NCBI GenBank assembly: GCA_000388065.2
Contig: KB932203.1
Length of the DNA: 31,402 bases
Source of the DNA: Fonticula alba ATCC 38817
Lineage: Eukaryota; Protista; Nucleariida
Strand: one strand, 5' to 3'
Positions 14,018 to 31,304 of this stretch are shown here, piece by piece. A program made the translations under genes and the position numbers. The first letter of the stretch is position 1. The number at the start of each line of letters is the position of its first letter. The notes beneath the pieces were generated by a model. That model was not told the origin of the DNA. It did no database searches and was given only the letters and a program-made list of their open reading frames with translations.

Positions 14018-14387
14018 NNNNNNNNNNNNNNNNNNNNNNNNNNNNNNNNNNNNNNNNNNNNNNNNNNNNNNNNNNNNNNNNNNNNNNNNNNNNNNNNNNN
14101 NNNNNNNNNNNNNNNNNNNNNNNNNNNNNNNNNNNNNNNNNNNNNNNNNNNNNNNNNNNNNNNNNNNNNNNNNNNNNNNNNNNNNNNNNNNNNNNNNNNN
14201 NNNNNNNNNNNNNNNNNNNNNNNNNNNNNNNNNNNNNNNNNNNNNNNNNNNNNNNNNNNNNNNNNNNNNNNNNNNNNNNNNNNNNNNNNNNNNNNNNNNN
14301 NNNNNNNNNNNNNNNNNNNNNNNNNNNNNNNNNNNNNNNNNNNNNNNNNNNNNNNNNNNNNNNNNNNNNNNNNNNNNNNNNNNNNNN
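14018..14387. other. Assembly gap (N run) upstream of MRPL16
   Basis: 370 N. It could hide promoter sequence or a small feature. Confidence 0.97.
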
Positions 14388-14934: not shown

Positions 14935-17900
14935 TCAGGAAACCGTGCGAGTGGGGTTCACCTGGCGGATCAAGGACAGGAACACCTCTTCCAGGGTGGT
15001 CTGGCTGATGGACCAGTCGCGAATGATGGCGGCCGCGGCTTGCAGAGACTCGGTCTGGTAGGCCGGCTGTGGGGGTTGCTGCTGTGACGGAGAGATCGAC
15101 GGGGCGCCGGTGGTCCGCGAAGAGGCGAGGGACCCCTGCGACCCCATGGTCAGGGGAGAGGCCGCGCCACTGGCGCCAAAGCCCCCCGGGGACTCGAGCG
15201 ACAGCAGGGTACTGGGCGGGGTGTCGCGATCGAGGGCCGGGTTTTTGGTGAAGGACTCCAGCCACCGGACGATGACCGGGACGGAATTGGTGGCAATGTG
15301 GTTGCCGATGGAGAAGATCAGCGATCCGGCCGAGTCGTCGGTCAGACGAACGTGCGTCATGGCAGCCGTGCCGATCAGCTCGGTCAGAGCCGAGCGAATG
15401 ATGTCCACGGCGCTGCGATTGGCCGCGGCGGCGATGCTGCTGGCCGTGGCCCCGCGCGTGGCCGGTCCACCACCGGAGGCAGTTCCATCGGCGCCGGACA
15501 CCGCGGACAGGTCCTTCATTTCCATCGGATCGTCGGTTGAGCTGGCGGCCGGAGCGGCGCCAGCCGGGTCCCCCTGGCCGGCAACCACCTGCAGTGCCGG
15601 GTCCGAGGACACGAGAACCGTCAGCTGGTAGCCCGCCCCGAGGGTGGTCTTCAGCCTGGTGGAGGTGCCGAAGGCGCGCAGGCGCCCGAGGGACATGATG
15701 GCAATGGTGTCGCCCAAAAACTCGGCCTCCTCCATGGAGTGCGTGGTCAGCACCACCGCACGGCCCTTCTTGAAGCGATCGATGAAGTTCCACACATGCC
15801 GGCGATTGACCGGGTCCATGCCGGTGGTCGGCTCATCGAGCACCAGCATGCCCGGGTCACCGAGGGTGGCCAGGGCCACACTCAGCCGGCGCTTCATGCC
15901 GCCGGAGTAGTCCCCGGCAAAGCGATTCCGAACGCCCCAAAGCCGGACACAGCCCAGGCGTTCGCGTGCCAGGTCCTCCAGCAGGGCCGGGTCGATGTTC
16001 CGGATGCCGGCAAAGAGGCGAATGTGCTCCATGCCGGTGAGCTGCTCGAAGAGGATGTCAAATTGGGGGCACACGCCGAGCGAATTGCGGATGGCCGACA
16101 GGCTGTTGGTGACCGATTGCCCGAAGAGGTAGACATCACCACTGGACGGGGCAGTGAAGCCGCAAATCATGGAGATGGTGGTCGACTTGCCGGCGCCGTT
16201 CTGGCCAAGCAATGCGAGGCTACGTGGATGGATGGATGAATGTGTGTGTGTGTGTGTGTGCCAACGAGCGAGCGAGGGAGATGAGGCGTGAGGCAAAGGG
16301 GGTCAGTGTCAAAGGGACACCGGGAGACGGAGAGGGAAAAAAGACAGAAGGACAGGCGGCAAAGATCCAATGGGAGACCCGCCATTTGCTCGGTGGTGAT
16401 ATCGGGACGTACACCGACCCTGGGGCAATGCGGAAGCTAGAGTCCACCACTGCGACGTTTTCCTTGCCACCGAAGAGCGACCGGTACACCTTACGGAGCT
16501 GGGTCACGCGTACGGCAGCCGAAGCGCCATCCTCGGCCAAAGTGGCAACACGCTCGGCGAAGACATCCTTGTCCTCATCGGGGAGTTGGGTCTGTGTCGA
16601 GCCCAGGAGGGGGAGAGGGAGGGGCGGAGGATGCGAGGGGACAGCATGGGAGATGGAGTTAGCTTCCCGTATGGGGACAACACTCGGCGGCGTCACGAGA
16701 GGCAGGAGGAGAAAGAAGAAGAACACTCGGGCGGGCTTTCAAGCGTGCGCGCGCGCGCGCGCAAGTGTGTGTGTGTGTGTGTGTATACATGCGTGCATGG
16801 CTGTGCATGCAGATATACACACACACACACACGGACACACGGACACACGCGGACACACTTGGGTGCACGGGGATACGCACCGGCGGCGGGAAGGACAGCG
16901 TCATCTGGCCCGCGGTTGCGCCGCCGCCGAAACCCCAATACGATGGCATGAAGGGGAACCACAGCTTGGCCGACTTGCCATAGGGGCCCGGGATGACCTG
17001 GTCGAAGTACCAAGTGAGCAGCATGAAGATCAGGAAGTTGCCAATGAACCAGAAGAAGCTGTCCCGCGGGAGGGGGATGTCGAAGTTGCCGACCGGCGCC
17101 GCGGACGGGGGGATCGGCTGGCCAAGGTGCTCCCAGCGGAAGCCCTCCCCGGGGATGAGCATGTCGCTGGCAAAGCTGAAGGCGCCCACCGCACGCGAAG
17201 AAATGTCCAGGTAGAGTTTGCCGAAGTTGAAGGGCGGCACCAGGAGGCCCATGATCCCCTGGCCGGAGGGGTGGGTCTGGGCCTCCCACCAAATATACCC
17301 GGAGTAGGAGTTGTTGAAGACGGCCGCCTGCAGCAGGAGCGAGATAATCAGCACGAAGAGCCCGACCGTGGAGGCGGTCTTGGCCGTGCGCAGGAGGGTC
17401 GACAGGAAGAAGGCCAGCGCGGTGAGCGACAGCTGCAGCATGAAGAACATGAAGAAGACGATCTTGTTGGTTGTTTTTTTTTTGCCCATCGGTCACAGGT
17501 TGTCGGGAGGTTAGGGATTGGCCCAGAGCAAGATGGGTGTGAATACGCGTGTGTGTGTGTGCGTGAGGGGGGAGGAGGGGGGGGGGGCTGGTGCATGGGC
17601 AAGTTGCAGAGGGTATAGACACGCACCCCGGGGCTGGTTTGGGAAATCCAGCTGATACCGAAGATGTTACCGAAGGCCAGGGTGACCAGGGAGATGAGGG
17701 TGATCATGGGCAGATTGCACAGGAGATGGCTGATCCAATAAACCGAGGGCTACCGGCGGTGGCAGAGGCAGGCAGACATGGCGGTGTGTGGGGCAGGTGC
17801 ACGAGGTCAGCATGCATGGCGATGTGGTGGCCGTGCGAGGCTGGCGGAGGCGCTTGCCTCGGGGCTACCAGCCCTCGGGAGGTGTACACCACCCTCCTGG

Positions 17901-19208
17901 GGGAGGGGGGGGGGNNNNNNNNNNNNNNNNNNNNNNNNNNNNNNNNNNNNNNNNNNNNNNNNNNNNNNNNNNNNNNNNNNNNNNNNNNNNNNNNNNNNNN
18001 NNNNNNNNNNNNNNNNNNNNNNNNNGGGGGGGGGGGGGGGGGGGGGGGGGCGGCAAAGGCAGCGAAAGAGCAAAATCCACATAGAGAGAGAGAGAGGCGC
18101 GTACCGCGAGACCCATCATCTGCATGCTGTGGCGCTGATAGGACTCCTTCTCTGAGACCACGGTCCCCAGCAAGAGGATGAAGTTCACCAGGCCGCAGGC
18201 AATGAGGAAGACCGGGGTCGAAGTCTGGGCAATGCGAGATGTCCCATTCGAAGCGATCAAAGGCCACGAGCGGGCGGACATTTCATATCGGAATTGGTCG
18301 TCCTGCTGGTGGTGTTGGACTGGGCAAAGGGGAGGGTCAGGGCCATGGGTGCACCGAGGGAATCAGGGGGGGGGGGGGGAAGGGAGCGGCGAGCAGGCGG
18401 CCGGGCGAGCGCATGCAAGAGGGCAAGAGAGACAAAGGTGCTCACGCACTCATGGCCTCATCAAGGGCCCGAATGAGCGATGCCAGCTGCAGGGAGGTGC
18501 GATCGGCGGCGGTCGGGGTGAAGGCCTTGTTGTCGAGTGGCGTAACCGTGGCATTGTACCACACCTGGTAGGTGTGGGTGTTGGCCCCGGCCCCGGGCTC
18601 GAAGCTGATGCCAAAGAGCGTGGAGTTGGGGTTGGACAGGCCCAGCCGAGCGAGGTCTTCGACCGTGGCCACCGGCACGAAGCCGGCATCGGCGTTGGCG
18701 GCCACCGTCGGGACCAGCCCGTCACCCGGCGGCGGGGGATACCGGGCCAGCTCCTCGGCAAAGGCAGCCCGGGACCAATCGAGGCTGACCGGGGCCGAAG
18801 CGACGGTCATATCCGGCACATGGAAGTCCCGGCCACCACGAGCGGCGTTGTTTCGCGCCACTCGCCGCATGATGTCCCGCACGGTCGGATCGTCGCCCGG
18901 GGCGAAGGCGATGGTGGCGCAGCGCTCGCGCGAGCCGGCCGAACTCTCGCGCACACGGCCCTCGAAGGGCGGCCAGCAGGGGGCCACCGGCGGGACCGAT
19001 GTATGCCAGGCGGCCTCCGGAGCGTCGGGATCGGCGCCAATTTGTCGACTGACCCGCGAGGAGCCGCGATCGAGGGCGAAGAGAATGAGAAGGAAGAGGA
19101 TCGGCGCCAGCACTTGGAGCAGGGTCGAGCGCCAGTAGCGCTTGATCTACGCGTCGTCATGTCGCAAGCGGAGAGGGGCACAAGGTCGTCCATGTGCATG
19201 TGCATGTG

Positions 19209-19251
<43 letters not shown>

Positions 19252-19550
19252 TCAGTTGTGAGAAGGCGGCCAGCTGAGCACCGTGAGGGTGTTTGAGTCA
19301 AGCAGACCCTCGACAGAGCATGTCCGGCAGTGGGCAGATGCAGGGCTCTTGGCCAGTATGTGTGTGAGTGTGCACTTGAAGGCGCATGTACCTGTAGGAC
19401 ATAGTACTTCCACAGCATGATCTTCAGCTGGGCCAGCCAGCCGGCAAAGCCGGAGTCCTGCATGCGCGAGGGGAAGGACTTGAGCGGTCCGGCGCGGGGG
19501 CCGGGCGGCGCGTCCGGGTCCACCTGGTGGGCGAGGCTGACCGAGGACAT
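14935..19550 (-). CDS. ABCA-subfamily half-transporter A (TMD + extracellular domain + one NBD), ~1079 aa, 7 exons
   Basis: Exons (-): 19550-19392, 19146-18450, 18319-18105, 17749-17627, 17462-16881, 16591-16413, 16219-14935 (3240 nt). Walker A GQNGAGKST, Q-loop GVCPQFDIL, signature YSGGMKRRL, Walker B LVLDEPTTGMDP, H-loop LTTHSMEEA, ABCA-type tail DWSISQTTLEEVFL. One N gap lies in intron 3. Confidence 0.92.
17915..18025. other. Assembly gap (N run) in ABCA-A intron 3
   Basis: N run flanked by G runs on both sides. Confidence 0.97.
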
Positions 19551-19806
19551 GATGGTGATGGTGCGCGCGCGCGCGGACGAACGGGCGGACGGGCGAGCGA
19601 GCGAGCGATCGAGTCCCCGGTTGCGGGAGGGAACAAAGGAGAACAGAAGACGGAGGGGGGGGAACGGGAAGAAGGAGGAGAGCGTGTGTATGTGTGTATG
19701 TGGGAGTGCGTGGGCGCGCGGCGTGGGGTACGGGCGGACACAGGCCAAGGCCAAGGGGGGGCTGGCTGCCCTTGAGGTGGCGGCGGCGGCGGTGGCGGTG
19801 GCGGTG

Positions 19807-19837
<31 letters not shown>

Positions 19838-22473
19838 ATGCCAGCAAAGAGAGGATTGGCCGTCGGATCTCCGGGGATCTTCAGGGGGCCCCTCCGGGGG
19901 GAGGGGTGCCGAGCGTGCGCTGGATCGTGCGTCCGGCCCCCCTTCCCCCCTTCTGCGTCAGGCTGTGTCTGCCCGCTCTGCTCCCCCCCCCCCCCCCCCC
20001 CCCGACCTGCTCGAGATCCGACCTGGGGGGCGACCTCCTGTGCTGCCAGCGAAATTTGGGCCCCGCGATGTGTTGGAGACGGGGGGGGGGGGGGCGCTCC
20101 ACGGCCGTACCAGTGGACCTCCTCCCGCGGGCTTGCCCCGTGCCGAGGGGCGGGAACGGGAGCCCGGCGAAGTGTCAAATTCCGCCGGTCAGCTCGCCAC
20201 GCAGCTCGGGCTCTCGGCCGAGCAGACGGGGGAGCCCGCAGCACGCCATTGTCCTGCACCACCGAGGCGCGTGCCTGAGCCTGCGCGCCTGCCGATGCAT
20301 GCGTTTGCGGGAACCTGCGGTGGGAGGGGGCGTGTCGGCGGGGTCGCGTAGCCCGGGACGGGCGGTGTCGCGGGCCGGCCCGGCGCCCCGCCATTTTCGG
20401 GCGAAAGTCCTCCCCGGCCAGACGATCAAGCCTCCATGGCAAGGGGAAAATTGGTGGCCTGTCCCGGGCGCCGGCGAGGCTGGCCGGGGCCTGTTCCGAC
20501 AGGGGGGGGCAGCCGCCGCTGGGGGTGGAACAGCAGCCGCATGCCGGCGACAGTGTACGTGGCCGGTGACGCCGGTGCCGTGTTTGTGTGTATGTGCGCG
20601 TGCATTTGCGAGAACATGCCCTGGCGCCGGCCTGCACACCCAGCCCGGGGCCCGGGGCCGGGCCCCTTTTCACGCTCGCTTCTCCTTGGGCTCCCGGCCG
20701 GGCAGGCGAGCGCTTCTTTGCACGTATATTGCGGACCCCAGCCCGACTTGCGCGAAGCAGGCGTGACCTCGGGGCCGAAACCCGATGCGCGCGCGCGCGC
20801 GCAGGGCCCCGTCCCCCGGGCCGCCGGCTTCGGATCGCGGGGGAAGGAAACCGAGGGAGGGCGGGGCCGGGGGCGGGGGCGAATTTCCCAGCCGCCCAGG
20901 CGACCGCGGCTTGCCAGCGTCCTGGCTAGCCCCGTGTGGTGGGCGCGTCCCGGGGCCGGGGCCGGCGGTTGGATGAGCAAGGGGTCTGTCTCCGGGGTGA
21001 GCGCCATATGGCGGAGTCAGGCGCTATTTCCGGCCGGCCGCTGGCCCCCTCGGTCATGGCCCGGCTGGAACCGGCTCGGCGTCGGGCTGCCTCTTCTCCC
21101 TACCCCCCCCCCCCCCTCCCGAGCATCTGAATGCGCGTCCGACGTCCGGGCCTGGACTCGGACACGAAAGCGCCCCCCCGCGCGCCCCCGCAAAGACCCA
21201 ACAGCAGACCTGCTGCATACCCCCCCTTTGGCGCTAGAACAATCCAGGACCAGGACATTGGGGGCCGTCCATGAGCGGCCCCACGTCTTCTTCACAGGGA
21301 TGACTGTGTGGGCACAGGGACCCCAGGGCGGCGGAAGAGACGAAGGCCGGGTGGTACCCGGACCGCGGCCGGAGGAGGGGCCCGGCGGTCGCACCGCCCT
21401 CCAGCGTGCTGTCCGAGTTTTGTCCGCGCATTCCGCCCCTGGAGGCCCCTTTCACACGCCCCCGGCCAGTCTTGCCAAGTCTGTGTGTCGGGGCGCGGGG
21501 CGCGGGGGGGGGGGGGGGGGGGCGGGGATGCGGTCGGGTGTCTGGGCTCGGGCGCTTGCGAGGTCTTCACATTTTCACTTAGACCCGCGGCCAGCCCGAC
21601 CGGGCTCTTCGCCCAGTGGTCCCTCCCCCCACCCCCCTCCTCCGAGCCCGCCTCCCCGTCCCCCGGGGCCCAAGCGTGCGGCCGCCCGGCCCGGCGTTGC
21701 CAGGAAGCCCGGGCGAGGGTTGGCACATGCTGGGCTCCGTCAGTGACACATCGTCCACGGCGGCAAGGGCGGCGACTGAAAAGAATGAAGTAGGGGCGAG
21801 CAGGCGCGTCGGTCGCTGCCCGCATTTCGCCGGCAGATCCAGGGAGGTCTCGCTGGCACACGCGACCCGGCACCTGTCCCAGTCTCGGTCCGATGAGGAA
21901 TGCGAGAGAAGCCGGAGCGCGAATTGTCCGCCGGGCGTGCCCCCCTTCCCCCCTCCCCCCCCCGGCGGCTCATGGCTTCTCTTCTCCCAAATTGCGATCA
22001 AATTTCCCCCCGCCGCTGAGTGCGATCTCTCCCCGCGGCAGGTCGGTGTCAGCCCGCCCCCCCCCCCCCTGGCCCCTGCCGCCTCCCAGCCGGCCGGGCG
22101 GATGTAACATCTGCAAGGCAGACCGCCCGACTGGTGGCCGTGTCGCTCGCTCGGTTATGGTTGGCAAGCGCCCTTCGAGCGGCTAGTGGGAGGGGGGGGG
22201 GGGGCAATCTTGGCCGCACAGGATCTCGCCTCGCCGACTCGATGGAGCCAGATCCCCTCCCCCGCCCCCCCCCCCCCCCCAAGCGGCAGCGCTGTTCCAC
22301 CGGCAGGCGAGGCCCACACCCTGCGTCCCCCAAGGCCCCAACCCGCCGCATCGTCCCCTCCCTCTCTTCCCCAGAGCCCGCTTGGCCCCCACCATCACGC
22401 TCTTTGCTTCCCCTCGCTAGCCTCCGGGTGCCACGCCTCCCTCCTCCTCGCCCCTCTACCTCGCCTCGTCACC
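19551..22473. promoter_or_regulatory. Divergent (putative bidirectional) upstream region shared by the two ABCA genes
   Basis: Lies between the - strand start at 19550 and the + strand start at 22474. No recognisable protein domain inside. Regulatory role inferred from geometry only. Confidence 0.55.
19776..19837. repeat. (GGY)n trinucleotide repeat, ~20 units, upstream of ABCA-A
   Basis: A ggtggcggcggc... run ~225 bp upstream of the ATG at 19550. Confidence 0.9.
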
Positions 22474-25400
22474 ATGGTCGAGTCGATGGAGATGTCGCCG
22501 ATGTCCGGGCGGACGGCCGCCTCCTCGGCGGCTACCATGCCGATGGCCGCCGGCTCGCCGCCTCTCGGTGGCGGCACCTCCCCTCCCCGTCGAGTTCAAC
22601 ACTCGGCCGGGGCCATCCGCCGATCACAGCTGAACGCCCTCTTTCGTAAGACGGCCACACACCAGGTACGTGCGATGCACATGCGCGCCTTGGCACCCGC
22701 CGCGCCTCTCCGCTATCCCTCCCCCCGTGGCCCAAGTGCATCCGTCCCACCCCGCCTGCCGGGGCTCTCTCTCTCTCTCTCTCTCTCTCTCGTTCTTCCC
22801 GAGCAGCGGTGCACCCTCCCGTGCAGAGGTCACCGCTGGACTCTTTCCCCGCTGGCCACTGACACTCGCTGCAAATCGTGGCCCCCTCCGCCGGGGCCTT
22901 GCCCCTGCTCCCTGCCCAGCGCTACCAAATGTTCACGAACATTTGCTGTGTCCTGGCCTGCCCATTGGTGCTGGTGGCCATCTGCGGCATCCTGGCCATT
23001 GTGATTGATCTGCTGGTCGGCGACCTCTTCCAGGCGGTCGGGGTGCAGTACTGCTCCGGCTCGCCGGAAGTCATGATCCCCGGCACATACCGGAGCTACC
23101 TGCCGAAGGCGGACCTGTCCAATGGGGCCGTCGGCGTCGATCCGGATGGCGAGCTGCGCGTCCTCCTCGGCCATGGCAAGTCCTCCTCCTATGAGGGACG
23201 TGCGTGCATGCACTTCTTCTCGACCCATGTCTATGGCACCCAGATGAGCGACCCCTTCAGCGGACCAGTGACCCCCTCCTGCCGGGGCGCCCCTCGCGCG
23301 GAGTTCTGCCCATTCCCGGCATTGTGCGTGCCTCCCTCCCCGTCCCTCCCTCCTTCGGTGGGCCTCTCCCCCGGCCCCGGCTCTTGCTCGGCCCACCAAT
23401 GCCGGTGACGTCGTCAGCCTCCTCCCTCCCCCAGTCTGACCCCTCGGCTCCCCGAATGCCAGCACGCCCTTCCCCCCGACGGAGCTCGACTGGTTCCCCG
23501 ACCCACCGGTTGGGAATGAGGACTTCCCCAGCCTGGCTTTCCGGTACTTTGTGTCCGACAACGACCGGACCTGGGGCTACTTGGCCACGAACATCCCCAC
23601 CACGCTGGACGTCGGCGGCGGCATCACCGTGCCCGGTGTGGGCGCTCTGCCGCCCCTGACGAGCCCCATCTCTCGCGAGATGATTCCCACCAATCCGCTC
23701 GAGCCGCGAGATGTGAATGAGGGCATCGAGCAGGGCCTGTTGGGCGAGCTCCCGCGCGGGTTCACCATTGTCCCGGATGCCGCGGAGCAGTACATCGCCG
23801 ACCCGGCCTCCCCCCTCAGCGCTCCGGATAACCCTCTCCTCCTGCGGTATCCCTACTTCGAGCAGCTGACCCCGGCCTCCTCGGCCACGGAGGATCTCCT
23901 GGCCGCGGTGGATAAGGAGACCTTCGACCGGGTTCAGGCGTACGTTCCCCCTCTGCTTTGCCCTGCTCTCGTCGTTTGCATGCACCATGCCCGATCCGGC
24001 CTCCTCCCTGCGTCTGTGTCTTGCCCTCTTCCTTCCTCGACTGCCTCCTTTCTCGCTGTTCCCTCCCTCTTCCTCTCTCCACCTCCGTATCTCCAAGGAT
24101 TTTTGATTGCTGACCCTGTCGCGCTCATGGGCCGGTGTTTTCTTTTTTCGCGCACCTTGTGTCCCCTCACCAGCGCCATCAAGCATCTCCAGGCTCAGCA
24201 CCTCCTTCTGTCGCTGCCGCACGTCTCCACCCCGGGCCTGTACGTTTGTCCCCCCCCCCCCCCCCCCCCGCCCCATCCCCCGCCTCGATCCCCCCCTGCA
24301 GCATGGAGCAAACTCTCGAGGCTCAGATCGCCCTGGCGGCGGTTCCCCGCGCGTCCATGACTCTGCACTCAATGTCGGCCGGTGTGGATCCCACCCATCG
24401 GTCTGACCCCACCAGCAGTCTGCTGAATGTCACCTTCCATGTGGGCTTCGACCAGCAGCTTCAGGGCCTCAGTGAGCTGGCTCCCACGCGTGGGCTGTCC
24501 ACCTTCCTGAAGGATCAGCCTGGCGTGGCGCCCCTGCCGTCGGCCCTGTTCAGCCTGCTCCGGGCGCAAACCGGCCTCACCCAGGCGCTCATTAGCCTGC
24601 GCTCCCGGGCGGCCGGGTTCCTGCAGTTTGACCTGGGCCAGGCCCTGCGTCAGTGGCCATCCAACGGGACCAGTGGCTTCTTCTTCAACACCCGGGCCCT
24701 CTTCGGCAATGCGCTCTACCCGTTTGGCATTTCCTTCCTCCTGCCGGTGTTCGTGGTGTCCCTGGTCCGGGACAAGGAGCAGCGCGTGCTCATCATGATG
24801 CGCATGAATGGCCTGTCCGACTCCTACTACTATGCCATGGAGTACTTGCATTTCTATGTGCTGTACACCATCAGCACCGTGGTGTTCATTGTCACCGGTG
24901 TGGCCTTCGGCTTGGAGTTCTTCACCCGCACCGGGGCCGGGGTGTACCTGGCCCTCTTTTTCCTCTGGGGCCACATCCTGGTGGCCATGGCGCTCTTCCT
25001 GTCGGCGCTCTTCATGCGTGCTCGCACGGCCCAGATTGTCACCTTCCTGGTGGTGCTTCTGTCGATCATCGTCAACAACGGCCTGACCTTCATGTTCACC
25101 GGCCAGGACCGGCCGGCGGGCATCAACATCTTCCCGCCCTTCGCCTTCTATGGGGCTCTGATTACCATCAACAACCAGGCGTCCGATTTGTCCCTTCGGG
25201 CGTATGCGGTGGCCGACCTGGTCCCGGGCGATCCGGTGTTCACGAGCCTCATGTTCATGCTGGCGGAGATCATCGTCCTGCTGCTGGTGAGCTTGTGCGT
25301 GTGGGCTTCTCGCTTGCTTTTGCCCTCTCCCTCGCCCCTGTCGCCTGCTTTCCCGCGTCTGGTCCATTGCTGACTCCAATGCCCCCCCGATGTCCTGCGG

Positions 25401-26623
25401 TCTTCATTCTCCGCGTCCCTTCCTCCACTTTCGATCCCTCTTCCCTGCTTGTCCCCTTCCATTCGGCCCGCATCATACCCCTGCCATCCTGTCGGATTTC
25501 CCTCTGTGTTCCCCAAACTCTCCCCCGGACCCCCCCCCCCCGGGACGCATCTGTTCGGTGTCCCCCCGGTTGCTGGCGGCATCCTGCCCCGGCGCTCAAT
25601 TCCCTTTCCTCTCCTCCATGCTGTCGCGCCCTCCTTTCTCCCCATCTCTCCCCCCCCCCGCTCCCTCATTTGCCTTCCCCCTTGCCCCTCATCCAGCTAC
25701 CTCATCCTGGTCCTGCCGTCGGAGTTCGGTCTCCAGCTCCCGTGGCACTTCCCGGCCAGTCGGACGTATGCGGCCATCCAGCGGTTTATCGCGCGCCGCC
25801 GCCGCGCCGGCAACGACAGCATCAGTCACTACATGTCGGATGCCGAGGATCTGGCCGATGATCAGGACCACTTCGATCAGGGCCCGGCTTCGGCCGATGA
25901 ATTCCTGCATGCGGCGGATGCCGTGGCGGGCGACACCACGACCGGCCCCATGCGGTGGGATATCCCCGGCGAGGTCGGCGACGCGGCTGTGCAGCAGGAG
26001 CGCCGGCGTATCTATACCGGCCGGCATTCGCCCAACTCGCCGCTGGTTCTGCGCGGCGTCAAGAAGGACTTCGCCGGCGGCAAGCGCGCCGTACGCTCCG
26101 TGAGCTTCAGCCCGGAGCGTGACCAAATTTTCGGCCTCCTCGGACCGAATGGCGCTGGCAAGACGACCCTCATTTCGCTGGTCACCGGGCTGCGGCCGCC
26201 TTCCGGCGGTCGGATCCGCGTGGCCGGGCATCTCCTGTCCTCCGGCACCCTGGACTCCATCTACCGGTCGATTGGCGTTTGCCCACAGTATGACATCCTC
26301 TGGAATGACCTTCCGGTGGAGGATCATCTGTATTTCTATGTCCGGCTCAAGGGGTCGAGCTTGCACTTGCCGCGGTCCAAGCGGGCCGCGGCCGATCGCC
26401 AAGCCGTCAGTGAGCTGCTGGCCGCCGTCGGCCTCGAGCGCTACCGCTTCACCGCGGCCGGCTCCCTGTCGGGTGGCGAGCGCCGACGCCTGTCGATTGC
26501 GATTGCCCTGGCCGGTGACCCGGAGGTCATCTTCCTGGATGAGCCGACCGTGCGCCCCCCTCCCATCCTCCTTGGCTCTCTCTTCCTTTTTTTGCTCCCA
26601 TCCTCCTCCTGCCCCCCCCCCCC

Positions 26624-26667
<44 letters not shown>

Positions 26668-27838
26668 CCCCCGCCCCCCCCCCCCCCACCCCCCCCCCCC
26701 GCCCCCGCCCCCCCCCCCCGCCCCCCCCCCCCCGCCGGCCCCCCCCACCCCCCCCCCCCCCCCCCCCCCCCGTTCGCCCACTGTCGCACCAGAGCCTGCC
26801 TCTCCCGGGCCCGGGCCCGATCGAGCGCTACGTCCACGCCTCGGATCAGAAGTATGGCCGGAAGCAGGAGGCTCTCGAGGCGCAAGCCCTCCTGGCCCAG
26901 GGGTACGTCATTGGCGCCAGTGATCTCTGCCCAATTGTCTTACAATTGGTCCTTGTCCGCGGTCCCTGGTTTTCTTCCCCTACACATGCACCCCCCCCCC
27001 CCCCCCCCCCCCTCCCCCCCCCCCCTCCCCCCCCCCCAACCGCATATGCCCGGCACTTGCTTCCTCAGGTCCTTCTGCTAACCCTGGCATGTCCGCCCCC
27101 TTTCTCCCATGTCCCTTTGTGCGGCAGACCGGTCTCGATCCCGAGGTTCGGCGTCTCATTTGGACCATTATCCAGGCTCAGCGCGTCGGCCGGACGATGG
27201 TCCTGACGACACACTCCATGGAAGAGGCCGAGGTCCTCTGCCAGAACATCGGCATCATGGTCCGCGGCTCACTGCGCGTCATCGGTGTACGTCCCTGTTG
27301 GTGGGCATTTGACGCGCCATTTTTTGCCCCTTCCTCCCCTTCCCCTTCGCTCGCTCGCTCGCTCGCCAGCGCCCTCTCGCGCGCACATCACGCGTGCCGG
27401 CCCGCCGTGCACTCACACCCACGTCCACCCTGTGCCCCGGGCGCGCAGACCCCCCTGGAGCTGAAGTCTCGCTATGGTAGCGGCGTGCGCATGTCCGTGA
27501 GCGTGGTCCCCGGACGCGCGGCCGAGGCGGCCTCCTTCGTGTGTTCGCTGATCCCGCGCGAGTGCGACCCGCGGGTCATTGAGCCGGCCGGCATCGAGGA
27601 TATCGCCGACCTGAAGACCATCTCCACCAATCGCCTGAGCATCGAATTCACAGCCAAACTGGGGCTCATCGCCCGGCTGTTCGAGAATCTCGGCGGCTCC
27701 AAGCACGGCCTCACCCCGGCCGAGATGTCCCAGCAGCTGGCCCAGCGCCATGGCGTCGTCGACTGGGGCATCTCCCAGACCTCCCTGGAGGAGGTTTTCC
27801 TGACCATCGTCGGTGATGAGGGCGCCGCCGCGGACTGA
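22474..27838 (+). CDS. ABCA-subfamily half-transporter B (TMD + large extracellular domain + one NBD), ~1177 aa, 8 exons
   Basis: Exons (+): 22474-22665, 22920-23323, 23463-23939, 24174-24239, 24302-25294, 25697-26549, 27128-27286, 27449-27838 (3534 nt). Walker A GPNGAGKTT, GVCPQYDILW, LSGGERRRL, IFLDEPT|TGLDP, LTTHSMEEAE, tail DWGISQTSLEEVFL; VRDKEQRVLIMMRMNGL after TM2. Exon boundaries in the extracellular domain are less certain. Confidence 0.9.
26612..26771. repeat. ~160-nt nearly pure poly-C tract in intron 6 of ABCA-B
   Basis: Seen directly, with only isolated T/G/A interruptions. Confidence 0.9.
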
Positions 27839-28426: not shown

Positions 28427-31304
28427 TTACTGCTGGTCGCGGAAGGCGTTGTACGCCTCATTCAGCGCATGGAAGACACCCTGTGCCAGGAGCTTGTCAG
28501 CGGTGTCGGCATTGTGCACCTTATCGGGGTGGACACTGGCAATGGCGCGCATGTAGCTGCGCTTGATCTGAGCCGGCGTCATCAAATCGGCCAAACTGAT
28601 GGCGGTGAACTCGATCGAGGCCGGGACCACCGTGTGAGCGGAGGACAGCAGCGCACGGATGTTCCCCACTCGCGGGTCCTTCCAGGCGGAGAGGGTGGCC
28701 TGCACGCGTGGCAGGGCGGCATCCGCCTCGGCCGAGTTCTGAGCGGCCTGCTCTTCCGCCGCGCGCATGCGCTTGAGGGCTATGGACGCGTGCGTGTTTG
28801 AGGGGGGAAGAGAAAGGGACAGAGAGGGGAGAGACAAGCGGCTGGTCAGAGAAACGGCGACTTGACATGCTGGTGCAGAGAGGGAAGAACGAGAAGAGCG
28901 AGAGAAAGACAAAGAGAGAGAGAGAGAGAGAGAGAGGGAGGGAGAGGGAGAAAAGCATGATCCGTTGCGATGGAGACTGGACACACCGTCAGAAGACTCG
29001 ACCTCGGCAGCGGTAACTGGGATGACGGGGGCCGTGGAGGCACTCGAGGCGAAGGCAGTCGGGGCAGCGGTGCTGGCAGGACCGGCGGAGGGGGCAGATC
29101 CAAGCGTGTCAAATTCCGACAGGTCGAAGCCGGCACTGCTGAGGGTCGGAGCCGGGGCAGACACAGCCGCGGGAGCAGCAGCAGCAGCAGCCGGAGTGGC
29201 CAGGCTGGCGCTGGAAGATGACGCCGAGGCCGAGCGGCTGGCTTCCGGCGATGACCGGCGCTTGTTCAGCATGGCCTGCGCCCGCTGGACGCGGTTCATG
29301 CCATCGGAGGCCTGCTTATCCTGGGGGCTGATCTCGCGCGCGCGCCGGAAGTCCGCCAGCGCCGGGTCCAGCTTTTCCAGCGATTCGTACGCCTGGCCAC
29401 GACGGATGAGTGCCCGGAAGTTCAAGGCATCCACCCGAAGGATGGCATCGCAGTCGGCCACACACAGGTCATAGTCCTGGGTGCGCAGGCGCGAGATGGC
29501 CCGGTTGTTGAGGATCGACACCAGGGTGGCCGGGTGCGTGCCGGCATTCAGCTGATCCAGCGCCGCCGAATAGGAGACTGTAATGGAGGGCGGGCGCAGG
29601 GCACAGACCGTGTCAGAGGCAGGGGAACGCGAAGGGAGAGGGAGGGACCGGGAGCCCGGAGGCAAGGAAGGAGGGAAACACACCAATGGCGCCCTGGTAG
29701 TCACCGGCGCGGAACTGGTCGTTACCGCGCTGACGCTCGGCCGTGACGGCCTCCGGCAGCGGGACATCCGAATCCTTGGGGGCCGGGTCAACCACCGGGA
29801 CCGGGGCCGGGGCGGCGGCAGGAACAGCCACAGGGGCGGTCGCGGCAACGGGGCGGGCACCGGCAGGGGTGTGGGTCTGCGGGGCGGGCACCGGGGCCGG
29901 GGCACTAACATAGCCCAGGCGGTCAGTCACAAGGCATGCATGGAAGCGGGGGCGAGGAGGGGGGGGGGGGGGGGGGGCGAGGGCGACGCACGCGCGCGGC
30001 TCCGAAACTGCGGAGGCGGTCAGATAGTCGATGGCAGCATCGAGAAGATGTGCGGCCGAAGCCCCGGGGCCCAGGGCCTCAGCCGACCACCGCAGGGCAG
30101 CGTGCGACTGCTCGATGTTGAAGCCCATGCCGCAAAGCTGATGCAGCAGCGCCGGATCGGCCTCCGGATGCGCGTGAGCATACGCCTCGGCCGCCACCTG
30201 CGAAGGGGCCGGAGCCGGGGCCGGAGCCGGGGCATCGGTAAACGCCTCGGCGGTCTGCTCGAACTGGGTCAGCGTGGCCACCGCCTGTGAAATGTTCCCC
30301 CGGTGGGCAATGAGCGCCTCGATGGCCATCGGCTCGGAGAAGCCCATGCTGACCAGCTGCGCGACAAAGTGCGGCGGGGGATGATACGGCTGGCCGGTCG
30401 GGGACCCGGGACCGCCGCCAGTCACCGAGGCAACCGCCGACAGGGCATTGTGGAAGTGCTCCTGCATCTGCTGGCGATTGACATACTGCGATGCCTGCTC
30501 AGTGGCCGCGCGTGCGCTCTCCGCCGCGGCGGTTGTCATGGCCGACAGCCGCGAAAAGAGGAAGGAGGTCAGGCCCTCGGCACTGCGCGAAGAGGAGGCC
30601 GACGCCCCAGTGGTGGAGGCAGCCGACGGGGAGCCGGACCCGCTGGCAGGGGATGCCGGCGACCGAGCGCGCGACGCCTCGGCAGGCTGGAAACCCGGGC
30701 CAGCGACCGCCACGGCCGGCGGCCGGGCTGGCGCGGCAGCCGTCCGGGTGGAGGGCTGAGCGGCGGGCTGGGCGGCGGGCTGGGCGGCGGGCTGAGCGGC
30801 GGGCTGAGCGGCGGGCTGGGCGGCGGGCTGGGCGGCGGGCTGGGTGGCACGGCCAAAGCCAGCGGCCGGACTCGGGGCCGGGCTCACTGCGGCCGAGGAG
30901 GCCGACGACGACGTGGACGGCGAGGCTGTCTGCGAGCCGACGACCGCAGGGCCCAAGCCAAGTCCAAGCAGGTCGCCCGAAGCCGGATGCGAGGCGCTGC
31001 TCGCGGCCACCGGCGGCTGGGCTGGCGAGGTCATCGACGATAGGGACGCCGGAGCCTTGACAAAGTCCCAGTCAGAGGCGTTGCTTGCGCTGTCCATCGA
31101 GGGGGAGGCCGTGGAGACATGCGGCTGCGGCTGCGACTGCGGGACCGCCGGGGTGGTGAAAAACCCGAAGATGTCATCATTGGCGATGGACGAGGGGGCG
31201 CCGTCAGTCGGAACCGGAGCCGGAGCCGGGGCCGCGGCGCCAGAAGCTGAAGAGGAGAAAAGGTCATCGAACGGGTCATTTGACGGGGCAGAGGCCGACT
31301 TCAT
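28427..31304 (-). CDS. Swa2/auxilin-like clathrin-uncoating co-chaperone (2x UBA + TPR + C-terminal J domain), >=825 aa; may have an upstream exon outside the window
   Basis: Exons (-): 31304-29992, 29904-29684, 29577-28987, 28779-28427 (2478 nt). UBA-like QLVSMGFSEPMAIEAL and QLCGMGFNIEQSHAAL; TPR helices RGNDQFRAGDYQGAI, NNRAISRL, RALIRRGQAYE; auxilin-type J domain NIRALLSS...VHPDK. A branch site plus CAG acceptor at 31310 suggests the first exon or a 5'UTR intron lies further upstream. Confidence 0.88.
30753..30842. repeat. Coding 12-bp tandem repeat (7.5 units) encoding (QPAA)x7
   Basis: GGGCTG(A/G)GCGGC units read directly; they translate on the - strand as QPAAQPAA... inside the Swa2-like gene. 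Confidence 0.95.

What the first reader, a model, noticed from the sequence alone, without database searches (positions are those of the whole stretch)
14935..27838. Head-to-head pair of dissimilar ABCA half-transporters: candidate co-regulated heterodimeric lipid exporter
Seen: two complete ABCA-type genes diverge from one ~2.9-kb region. Each has a single TMD plus NBD, intact catalytic motifs and the DWxISQTxLEEVFL tail. They are not recent copies: extracellular domains differ in size and sequence, signatures differ (YSGGM vs LSGGE), and intron patterns mostly differ. Established: ABC exporters need two NBDs, so half-transporters must dimerise; animal ABCAs are single polypeptides with two halves, while plants and some protists have half-size ABCAs; other heterodimeric half-transporters (ABCG5/G8) are encoded head-to-head. 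Inference: the two genes encode the two halves of one heterodimer under a bidirectional promoter, resembling the unfused state of full-length ABCAs. The cargo is probably a lipid or lipophilic signal.
Basis: partly seen in the sequence, partly recalled or inferred. Interest (0 to 1): 0.75.

Follow-up and report, generated by a model that had tools for sequence, protein, structure and literature searches.

The report
Split ABCA transporter in two genes
This amoeba carries the front and back halves of a lipid-pump (ABCA) protein as two separate genes that point away from each other, a layout it shares with chytrid fungi, so the halves almost certainly reunite as one pump; it is a natural split version of a protein family behind several human lipid disorders.

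Summary
Gene A (minus strand, 14935-19550, 7 exons, 1079 aa) and gene B (plus strand, 22474-27838, 8 exons, 1177 aa) are intact, spliced and transcribed ABCA-type half-transporters. Their start codons lie 2,923 bp apart. The gap at 17915-18025 lies inside intron 3 of gene A and hides no exon.

The heterodimer reading is supported, and more specifically than proposed.
- In a maximum-likelihood tree, A groups with the N-terminal halves of full-length ABCAs and B with the C-terminal halves. Both nest beside the halves of the same six full-length proteins. A+B as a single clade is rejected (p-AU 0.0004).
- The B/A head-to-head layout recurs in six chytrid or rumen-fungus genomes. Spacers are as short as 125 bp, and one genome duplicated the pair as a unit.
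- Both transcripts have near-equal contig depth in two RNA samples.
- The extracellular domains of a chytrid pair are predicted to dock (ipSAE 0.75; best control 0.00).

The pair is best read as a full-length ABCA that split before Fonticula and Fungi diverged, not as a primitive unfused state. Binding, promoter sharing and cargo remain untested. The notes returned from this scan did not mention this pair.

The parts
14935..19550 (-). Gene A, N-half-type ABCA half-transporter (1079 aa). CDS exons 19550-19392, 19146-18450, 18319-18105, 17749-17627, 17462-16881, 16591-16413, 16219-14935 (stop at 14935-14937).
   Evidence: Homology-guided GT-AG junctions. The model equals public protein P0350. 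RNA contigs confirm the 19392|19146 junction and the exon end at 18450. Pfam PF12698 and PF00005.
19551..19721 (-). Gene A 5' untranslated region, as far as it was seen.
   Evidence: RNA contigs cover 19392-19597 and 19543-19721. Contigs cannot fix the true start.
17750..18104 (-). Gene A intron 3, which contains the assembly gap.
   Evidence: Donor GTACGC after 18105 and acceptor AG before 17749, in phase 0. Orthologues align across the junction without a missing residue.
17915..18025 (.). Assembly gap (N run) flanked by poly-C. It is intronic and non-coding.
15574..16591 (-). Gene A ATPase domain (exon 6 and the start of exon 7), with Walker A GQNGAGKST, signature YSGGM, Walker B LVLDEPT and H-loop TTHSM.
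   Evidence: PDB best hits are ABCA4 and ABCA1 at E about 1e-103.
19722..22333 (.). Untranscribed-looking spacer between the two transcripts (70-73% G+C); candidate shared promoter region.
   Evidence: No spliced or long RNA contig lies here, only short partial matches of unrelated contigs at about 20710-21310. No Pfam hit in its ORFs. No Rfam family or tRNA. Unique in the genome. G+C.
22334..22473 (+). Gene B 5' untranslated region, as far as it was seen.
   Evidence: RNA contigs of both samples start at 22334/22335.
22474..27838 (+). Gene B, C-half-type ABCA half-transporter (1177 aa). CDS exons 22474-22665, 22920-23323, 23463-23939, 24174-24239, 24302-25294, 25697-26549, 27128-27286, 27449-27838 (stop at 27836-27838).
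   Evidence: RNA contigs confirm the first four exons. The rest rests on homology-guided GT-AG junctions. The model is in frame with one terminal stop. The contig length of 3387 nt fits the model plus about 130 nt of 3'UTR.
24174..24239 (+). 66-nt exon 4 of gene B (in the extracellular domain), not predictable from homology.
   Evidence: Joint 23939|24174 with GT..AG ends, and contig pieces 24174-24239 in both samples.
24696..25295 (+). Gene B membrane domain core (PF12698).
25698..27286 (+). Gene B ATPase domain (exons 6-7), split by a 578-nt proline-coding intron that stays open in frame. Motifs: Walker A GPNGAGKTT, signature LSGGE, Walker B IFLDEPT, H-loop TTHSM.

Best explanation
The two genes are the separated N-terminal half (gene A: TMD1-ECD1-NBD1-R1 type) and C-terminal half (gene B: TMD2-ECD2-NBD2-R2 type) of one ABCA transporter.

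Origin (inferred): a full-length ABCA gene was split before Fonticula and the Fungi diverged. The two pieces have since stayed head-to-head in several lineages.

Mechanism (inferred from how full-length ABCAs work):
- The products are made in similar amounts from a common upstream region.
- They meet in the membrane as an A-B heterodimer.
- Their unequal extracellular domains pack together, and the two catalytically competent ATPase domains form two canonical ATP sites.
- The complex moves a lipid or lipid-like cargo.

Shown here: gene structures, transcription, N-type and C-type ancestry, conserved divergent linkage, and a predicted extracellular-domain interface in a chytrid pair.

Inferred: physical heterodimerisation in Fonticula, shared promoter, fission polarity, cargo.
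For: 1. Ancestry.
- The careful ML tree (65 rows, 516 columns) splits at 100/98. One side holds all 16 C-halves plus B-type plus gene B. The other holds all 16 N-halves plus A-type plus gene A plus the plant, algal and Anaeramoeba half-size proteins.
- A nests at 99/99 with the N-halves of P0367, P0359, P0366, P0372, P0362 and P0395. B nests at 99/97 with the C-halves of the same six.
- A wider quick tree with 24 full-length proteins gives the same result.
- Membrane-only and ATPase-only trees agree.
- A+B as one clade is rejected (lnL difference 146.6, p-AU 0.0004).

2. Linkage. B(-)/A(+) head-to-head pairs occur in:
- Gorgonomyces: two pairs in tandem, spacers 125 and 382 bp.
- Polyrhizophydium, Entophlyctis, Piromyces.
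- Polychytrium and Obelidium, spacer about 400-495 bp.
- Types were checked by tblastn.
- The two Gorgonomyces A copies are sisters, and so are the two B copies, so the pair duplicated as a unit.

3. Co-occurrence. About 30 species or genera have both types, including species where the two are unlinked.

4. Expression. Spliced contigs of both genes are present in two samples at mean word depth 14.3/12.9 (A) and 15.2/13.3 (B).

5. Docking. Obelidium B ECD (P0046 24-407) with A ECD (P0242 62-250) gives ipSAE 0.75, 0.78 and 0.75. The best of 3 controls is 0.00. The runs share at least 66% of contacts, and partner pLDDT is at least 74. This mark was reached by 51 of 78 solved complexes and 2 of 108 mismatched pairs.

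6. Both families keep Walker A, DEPT and TTHSMEE, so there are two live ATP sites as in full-length ABCAs.
Against: - No experiment shows binding.
- The docking pass may reflect the model's memory of solved ABCA1/4/7 ECD1-ECD2 interfaces. Homodimers were not tested, and chain 1 had a low overall pLDDT (about 40).
- N-type half-size ABCAs of plants exist without any C-type partner, so an N-type half can presumably work without one. Fonticula also has a third, unlinked N-like half.
- The pair is unlinked in Mortierella, Basidiobolus and Gonapodya. No partner lies within about 10 kb in Hyaloraphidium and Rozella.
- In Fonticula the transcript ends seen are 2.6 kb apart, which is not a compact bidirectional promoter.
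- Depth from two contig sets of one study is a poor measure of co-expression.
- Most full-length relatives in the tree are unnamed metagenomic or transcriptomic proteins.
- Neither ATP site is degenerate, so the asymmetry typical of many obligate heterodimers is absent.
Confidence: 0.77

Rival explanations
1. A and B are two independent half-transporters that each homodimerise and carry different cargoes. They are neighbours only because a divergent promoter region is hard to break up.
For: Half-size N-type ABCAs in plants have no C-type partner (tree). The pair is unlinked in zygomycete-grade fungi and Gonapodya. Both ATPase domains are fully canonical, so either could form a symmetric dimer.
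Against: This does not explain why the neighbours are exactly one N-type and one C-type half next to the halves of the same full-length proteins. It also fails to explain why all eight pairs seen are divergent and why the pair duplicates as a unit. Nor does it explain why the unlike extracellular domains are predicted to dock. C-type halves without an N-type partner were not seen in any species where both could be checked.
Confidence: 0.1
2. Partner choice is flexible. A-B heterodimers form, but A (and the third N-like half on contig C1) also forms homodimers or pairs with B in other combinations, giving several transporters from three genes.
For: A third, divergent N-like half-size gene lies at G000:C1:3915280-3918045. 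Chytrids carry several A and several B paralogues, not all paired. N-type halves work without C-type partners in plants.
Against: Nothing here shows it. Near-equal A and B depth and unit-wise duplication fit a fixed 1:1 pair better.
Confidence: 0.1
3. Assembly artefact: a single full-length gene was wrongly inverted at a scaffold gap.
For: The window has five N runs. One is inside gene A and one is just downstream of it.
Against: A exons 1-3, the spacer and all of B are one gap-free stretch. A has its own stop and B has its own 5'UTR and ATG in separate RNA contigs. The same layout occurs in six independently assembled fungal genomes.
Confidence: 0.01

Closest known systems
Full-length ABCA transporters (ABCA1, ABCA3, ABCA4, ABCA7; nearest group includes Cantina marsupialis P0362)
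   Same: Same subfamily by ATPase-domain similarity and membrane-domain family PF12698. There is a large loop between TM1 and TM2 of each half, and an EEVFL-type tail after each ATPase domain. A matches the N-half clade and B the C-half clade.
   Different: The two halves are on separate polypeptides from separate, divergently transcribed genes. The extracellular domain of the N-type half is the smaller one here (about 243 vs 420 aa). That reverses what I recall for ABCA1, where ECD1 is the larger.
ABCG5/ABCG8 (sterol exporter; obligate heterodimer from head-to-head genes)
   Same: Two dissimilar half-transporter genes sit head-to-head with a common upstream region. The products are expected to pair 1:1.
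   Different: It is a different subfamily with reversed domain order (NBD-TMD). G5/G8 has one degenerate ATP site, whereas both sites look canonical here. G5 and G8 are not the halves of a known full-length protein. Heterodimerisation here is not shown experimentally.
[quoted passage not shown]
   Same: From the paper's description these are probably the same gene families. It reports half-size ABC-A proteins only in chytrids (Spizellomyces, Batrachochytrium) among the fungi it surveyed.
   Different: In the passages read, that paper does not separate them into N-type and C-type. It does not report head-to-head pairing and does not cover Fonticula.
Plant half-size ABCA (ATH group, e.g. Capsella ABCA11-like P0233, Camellia ABCA2-like P0176)
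   Same: Half-size TMD-NBD ABCAs. They fall on the N-half side of the tree together with gene A.
   Different: They sit in a different N-type subclade, next to the N-halves of Cavostelium and Thecamonas-type proteins. No C-type partner family appeared in my searches, so they presumably homodimerise.
Xiong et al. 2015 model of ABCA origin (PMC4649718)
   Same: It also compares half-size ABCAs with the N- and C-halves of full-length ones.
   Different: They report half-size ABCAs closer to C-halves and infer full-length origin by 'heterofusion'. Here half-size ABCAs fall into both an N-type and a C-type class, and the Holomycota pair looks like a fission product.

Membership tests
ABCA subfamily of ABC transporters | ATPase domain more similar to ABCA than to any other ABC subfamily | tested here: met
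   A: ABCA4/1/7/3 at 334-349 bits against at most 126 bits for the next class. B: 171-196 bits against at most 86 bits.
ABCA subfamily of ABC transporters | Forward order TMD then NBD, with an ABC-2-type membrane domain (PF12698) | tested here: met
   P0350: PF12698 at 272-494, PF00005 at 642-784. B: PF12698 in exon 5 and PF00005 in exon 6.
ABCA subfamily of ABC transporters | [quoted passage not shown] | tested here: met
   Hydropathy: A has TM1 at 60-78 and TM2 at 322-340. B has TM1 at 75-93 and TM2 at 514-532. Topology is by hydropathy only and is not verified.
ABCA subfamily of ABC transporters | Regulatory (ACT-like) domain and conserved EEVFL-type tail after the ATPase domain | tested here: inconclusive
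   Tail motif WSISQTTLEEVFL in A and WGISQTSLEEVFL in B. PF26955 ACT_13 is listed for many A-type relatives. It did not reach threshold in P0350 or P0046. No structure was predicted.
N-half / C-half classes of full-length ABCA | Gene A falls in the clade of N-terminal halves and gene B in the clade of C-terminal halves | tested here: met
   Bipartition at 100/98; nested at 99/99 (A) and 99/97 (B). Quick tree with 24 full-length proteins. Partitions. AU test.
Obligate heterodimeric half-transporter pair (ABCG5/G8-like system) | Genes head-to-head, with the arrangement conserved in relatives | tested here: met
   Fonticula window, plus seven pairs in six fungal genomes, all divergent. The pair is unlinked in several other lineages.
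Obligate heterodimeric half-transporter pair (ABCG5/G8-like system) | Co-expression from a shared bidirectional promoter | tested here: inconclusive
   Both are transcribed at similar contig depth in two samples of one study. The transcript ends seen are 2.6 kb apart. No start-site or multi-condition data are available.
Obligate heterodimeric half-transporter pair (ABCG5/G8-like system) | The two products bind each other | tested here: inconclusive
   In-silico only, and on the Obelidium pair's extracellular domains: ipSAE 0.75 against best control 0.00. The Fonticula proteins were not tested, homodimers were not tested, and there is no experiment.
Obligate heterodimeric half-transporter pair (ABCG5/G8-like system) | One degenerate and one consensus ATP site | tested here: not met
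   Both families keep Walker A, Walker B DEPT, an SGG signature and H-loop TTHSMEE. This feature is common in such pairs but not defining for all. Full-length ABCAs also have two consensus sites.

The most novel reading that the evidence does not exclude
One inversion in an ancestor of Fonticula and the Fungi did two things at once. Its breakpoints lay upstream of the promoter and in the linker between the two halves of a full-length ABCA gene. It cut the gene and flipped promoter plus N-half, leaving the ancestral promoter between the halves to drive both. The result is an obligate A-B heterodimer held head-to-head since before the two lineages split. It would be the first split ABCA and a natural system for asking why the two ABCA halves are unequal.
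Probability: 0.3. Interest if true: 0.8.

Novelty: new variant of a known kind. Interest (0 to 1): 0.68.

Why it matters
Full-length ABCAs move lipids, and several human lipid disorders are tied to them. Because their two unequal halves sit on one chain, it is hard to ask what each half contributes.

A natural split version would help in three ways.
- It has separately encoded N-type and C-type halves that can be expressed alone or together. That would allow direct tests of half-specific assembly, ATPase asymmetry and the role of the extracellular domains.
- It is a clear case of gene fission followed by long retention of a divergent gene pair across Holomycota. It parallels ABCG5/G8 in another subfamily.
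- It revises the picture of half-size ABCAs as one homogeneous group. They fall into N-type and C-type classes.

In the papers I could search, the chytrid half-size ABC-A genes are listed, but neither the two classes nor the pairing is described.

Tried and rejected
- **Best PDB stretch as a guide to N- or C-half identity.** Both A and B hit NBD1 best in most ABCAs. This is uninformative. Only the tree with both halves resolved the question.
- **phmmer of B's membrane exon against PDB.** No hit.
- **One mis-framed reference.** Corrected and resent.
- **Raw-read RNA runs X12 and X13 ('organism B').** Only 9 and 19 partial, poly-C-ended reads were laid. They say nothing about expression.
- **A hidden gene or repeat in the spacer.**
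  - No Pfam domain in its five longest ORFs.
  - No Rfam family or tRNA.
  - Unique in the genome apart from 33-70-nt low-complexity matches.
  - The RNA-contig depth at 20710-21310 comes from short pieces of contigs that run on unlike.
- **Assembly inversion artefact.** Rejected; see the rival explanations.
- **Own-genome search for further ABCA genes.**
  - One more N-like half-size gene was found.
  - One reversed (NBD then TMD) gene was found, which is not ABCA-like in order.
  - No full-length ABCA was found at this sensitivity.
- **Left out under the operators' rule.** The joined 1177-aa model of gene B has no reference.
  - It was never sent to a database, family, fold or complex tool.
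  - Gene B was searched exon by exon.
  - The joined models were used only inside local scripts (tblastn, HMM, trees).
  - Gene A gained a reference (P0350) only.
- **Not checked for lack of look-ups.** Chytridium lagenaria (P0334/P0106) and Physocladia (P0278/P0041) are probably further pairs. That is judged only from equal contig lengths.
- **Homodimer docking controls.** Not possible; the cap is one job.

Full report
**Setting**

The window is G000:C3:3407342-3438743 of a 31.3-Mb, 214-contig genome. It is G+C-rich (61-73% over the finding) and intron-bearing. Earlier notes of this scan name the organism Fonticula alba. I did not verify the name. It fits the best B-type relative being from Nuclearia. 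I treat the organism as a holomycotan amoeba.

**The gap**

- The N run at 17915-18025 is flanked by poly-C. It lies between a GTACGC donor after 18105 and an AG acceptor before 17749.
- Joining these two sites keeps the frame (...QMMGLA|PSVYWISHLL...).
- Chytrid orthologues align across the junction without losing a residue (P0142 137-196, then 198-244).
- A 1079-aa public protein (P0350) is identical to my spliced model.
- The gap is therefore intronic. Its true length does not matter for the coding sequence.
- There is no N between 18026 and the end of the window. The 5' exons of A, the spacer and all of B are therefore physically contiguous.

**Gene models**

- Homologues of two kinds were found exon by exon. 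They were laid back on the window with tblastn.
- Junctions were chosen among in-frame GT-AG pairs by fit to those homologues. Donors are consistently GTGCGT, GTACGT or GTACAT.
- Two small runs of a 2012 study hold spliced contigs, which shows they are RNA. These contigs confirm:
  - A intron 1 (19392|19146) and the end of A exon 2 (18450);
  - B introns 1-3 (22665|22920, 23323|23463, 23939|24174);
  - a 66-nt exon (24174-24239) that homology had missed.
- Gene A is 7 exons and 1079 aa. Gene B is 8 exons and 1177 aa. Each has one terminal stop.
- B introns 4-7 rest on homology and splice signals. They also fit the length of a 3387-nt contig.
- Transcripts reach at least 19721 (A) and 22334 (B). 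The start codons are 2,923 bp apart, and the transcript ends seen are about 2.6 kb apart.
- The spacer has no Pfam domain, Rfam family or tRNA, and it is unique in the genome.

**What the proteins are**

- Both have PF12698 and PF00005 in TMD-NBD order.
- Both have ABCA4, ABCA1, ABCA3 and ABCA7 as by far their best solved relatives.
- Both have a long TM1-TM2 loop, about 243 aa in A and about 420 aa in B.
- Both have complete Walker A, Q-loop, signature, Walker B, D-loop and H-loop motifs, and an EEVFL-type tail.
  - A-type: YSGGM and GQNGAGKS.
  - B-type: LSGGE and GPNGAGKT.

**Two old families, not recent copies**

- Gene A aligns collinearly along its whole length with an 'A-type' family. 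Gene B does the same with a 'B-type' family.
- A-type is widespread in chytrids, Blastocladiomycota, Neocallimastigomycota, Glomeromycotina, Mortierellomycotina, Basidiobolus and others.
- B-type was found in chytrids, zygomycete-grade fungi, Nuclearia and Lithocolla.
- In a first tree the two families are separated by a long branch. Plant half-size ABCAs sit on the A side.

**The key result**

The large library search with A's last exon returned P0350 and many full-length ABCAs. I cut 24 of them into their two TMD-NBD cores with an HMM. I then built trees together with the half-size proteins.

- *Quick tree* (96 rows). A-type clusters with the N-halves of P0367, P0359, P0366, P0372, P0362, P0379 and P0395. 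B-type clusters with the C-halves of exactly the same seven proteins.
- *Careful tree* (65 rows, 516 columns, LG+C20+F+G4, UFBoot/SH-aLRT).
  - One branch (100/98) separates two sets. The first holds all 16 C-halves, B-type and gene B. The second holds all 16 N-halves, A-type, gene A and the plant, Trebouxia and Anaeramoeba half-size proteins.
  - The two subtrees mirror each other. A nests at 99/99 with the N-halves of six proteins, and B nests at 99/97 with the C-halves of the same six.
- *AU test*. Forcing A and B into one clade costs 146.6 log-likelihood units (p-AU 0.0004).
- *Partitions*. A membrane-only tree gives the same clean split (one change). An ATPase-only tree gives it nearly (two changes).
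- *Named full-length proteins*.
  - The nearest group includes the stramenopile Cantina marsupialis (P0362) and an MMETSP transcript (P0367).
  - A second group includes Cavostelium and Thecamonas.
  - A third includes Quercus ABCA1, Riccia, Paulinella, Nonionella and Clastostelium.

**Polarity**

The N and C subtrees root each other. In both, A and B are nested among halves of full-length proteins. One fission is therefore more parsimonious than three or more independent fusions. So 'unfused state' describes what the pair looks like, but probably not its history.

**Conserved head-to-head linkage**

| Genome | Layout | Spacer |
|---|---|---|
| Gorgonomyces haynaldii | Two B(-)/A(+) pairs in tandem | 125 and 382 bp |
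| Obelidium mucronatum | B(-)/A(+) | about 400-495 bp |
| Polychytrium aggregatum | B(-)/A(+) | about 1.6 kb |
| Entophlyctis helioformis | B(-)/A(+) | under 3.7 kb (A model is N-terminally truncated) |
| Piromyces sp. E2 | B(-)/A(+) | not measured |
| Polyrhizophydium stewartii | B(-)/A(+), both copies 5'-truncated | 62 bp between the truncated models |

- Types were confirmed by tblastn with both models.
- The two Gorgonomyces A copies are sisters (100/92), and so are the two B copies (100/99). The pair was therefore duplicated as a unit.
- Equal contig lengths suggest further pairs in Chytridium lagenaria and Physocladia. These were not checked.
- The pair is not linked everywhere.
  - No partner lies within about 10 kb in Hyaloraphidium, Rozella, Mortierella sp. 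GBAus27b, Basidiobolus meristosporus and Gonapodya prolifera.
  - The last three nevertheless have both types, on different contigs.
- Fonticula lies outside the Fungi. The shared divergent layout is therefore most simply ancestral to Holomycota, with later breaks.
- About 30 species or genera appear in both the A and the B hit lists. Absences cannot be judged from lists cut at 120 hits.

**Expression**

Both genes yield spliced contigs in both samples. Mean word depth is 14.3 and 12.9 for A, and 15.2 and 13.3 for B. This fits 1:1 production but is weak evidence: one study, and depth taken from contigs.

**Docking**

- The extracellular domains of the Obelidium pair were used (P0046 24-407 with P0242 62-250).
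- ipSAE was 0.75, 0.78 and 0.75. The best of three controls was 0.00.
- The runs share at least 66% of their contacts, and partner pLDDT is at least 74.
- This mark was reached by 51 of 78 solved complexes and 2 of 108 mismatched pairs.
- The closest contacts run along paired stretches (B 328-333 with A 228-233; B 382-385 with A 183-187).
- Caveats:
  - Solved ABCA1/4/7 structures contain a like interface, so the pass may reflect that likeness.
  - Homodimers were not tested.
  - Chain 1 was poorly folded overall (pLDDT about 40).
  - The proteins were not those of Fonticula.

**Mechanism proposed**

A and B are made from a common upstream region and assemble as a heterodimer that rebuilds a full ABCA. 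It would have two unlike membrane domains, two unlike but interlocking extracellular domains, and two live ATP sites.

- The cargo is inferred to be a lipid only from what characterised ABCAs do.
- A speculative origin is a single inversion of promoter plus N-half, with one breakpoint in the inter-half linker.
  - This would both split the gene and leave the old promoter between the halves.
  - It predicts exactly the divergent layout seen.

**Literature**

- Kovalchuk and Driessen 2010 (PMC2848647) list half-size ABC-A genes in two chytrids. The passages read mention neither two classes nor pairing.
- Xiong et al. 2015 (PMC4649718) place half-size ABCAs with C-halves and propose 'heterofusion'.
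- Searches for head-to-head or heterodimeric half-size ABCAs, and for Fonticula ABC transporters, found nothing closer.
- The library is partial, so prior description elsewhere cannot be excluded.

**Left out**

The joined model of gene B was used only in local scripts and was never sent to a search tool.

**Verdict**

The finding is real and more specific than proposed. I class it as a new variant of a known kind: a heterodimeric half-transporter pair, here formed by the split halves of an ABCA.

Noticed in passing
G000:C1:3915280-3918045 (+), held as L010+L012: A third, divergent half-size ABCA-like gene (TMD then NBD, several introns), unlinked to the pair. Summed tblastn scores make it N-type-like (mean 243 bits with A-type and 203 with N-halves, against 155 with B-type and 134 with C-halves).
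   Followed up: partly
G000:C1:566785-568870 (-), held as L011+L013: A PF12698 membrane domain with the ATPase domain encoded upstream of it (NBD then TMD order). It is therefore not ABCA-like in architecture. It may be an ABCH-like or bacterial-type ABC-2 transporter.
   Followed up: no
L002:8084-11050 (Polyrhizophydium stewartii): A head-to-head B/A pair in which both copies lack their 5' halves. B matches from residue 560 on and A from residue 598 on, and the annotated starts are 62 bp apart. It looks like a deletion across the shared promoter and both first halves (a dead pair), or an assembly fault.
   Followed up: partly
Tree (no window coordinates): Plant, Trebouxia and Anaeramoeba half-size ABCAs are all N-half-type. 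They group with the N-halves of Cavostelium and Thecamonas-type full-length proteins, not with land-plant ABCA1. This disagrees with the statement in PMC4649718 that half-size ABCAs are closer to C-halves.
   Followed up: partly
window 26550-27127 and 27287-27448: Two introns of gene B stay open in the coding frame. The first encodes long proline runs. As a result, ORF lists show 585-aa and 249-aa 'ORFs' that read through them. This is a trap for intron-blind annotation.
   Followed up: yes
window 20710-21310 and 21910-22110: Short pieces of unrelated, more deeply covered RNA contigs match here and then run on unlike. Poly-C-ended reads from unrelated runs do the same. This is G+C-rich low-complexity sequence, not a transcript of this locus as far as can be told.
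   Followed up: partly
window 14018-14387: A 370-N gap lies about 550 bp downstream of gene A's stop codon, so A's 3' end and its downstream neighbour are not fully resolved.
   Followed up: no
window 28427-29911 (-): A long ORF just downstream of gene B ends in a sequence that resembles a J-domain-like C-terminus after Ser/Ala-rich low complexity. It is a separate convergent gene and was not examined.
   Followed up: no
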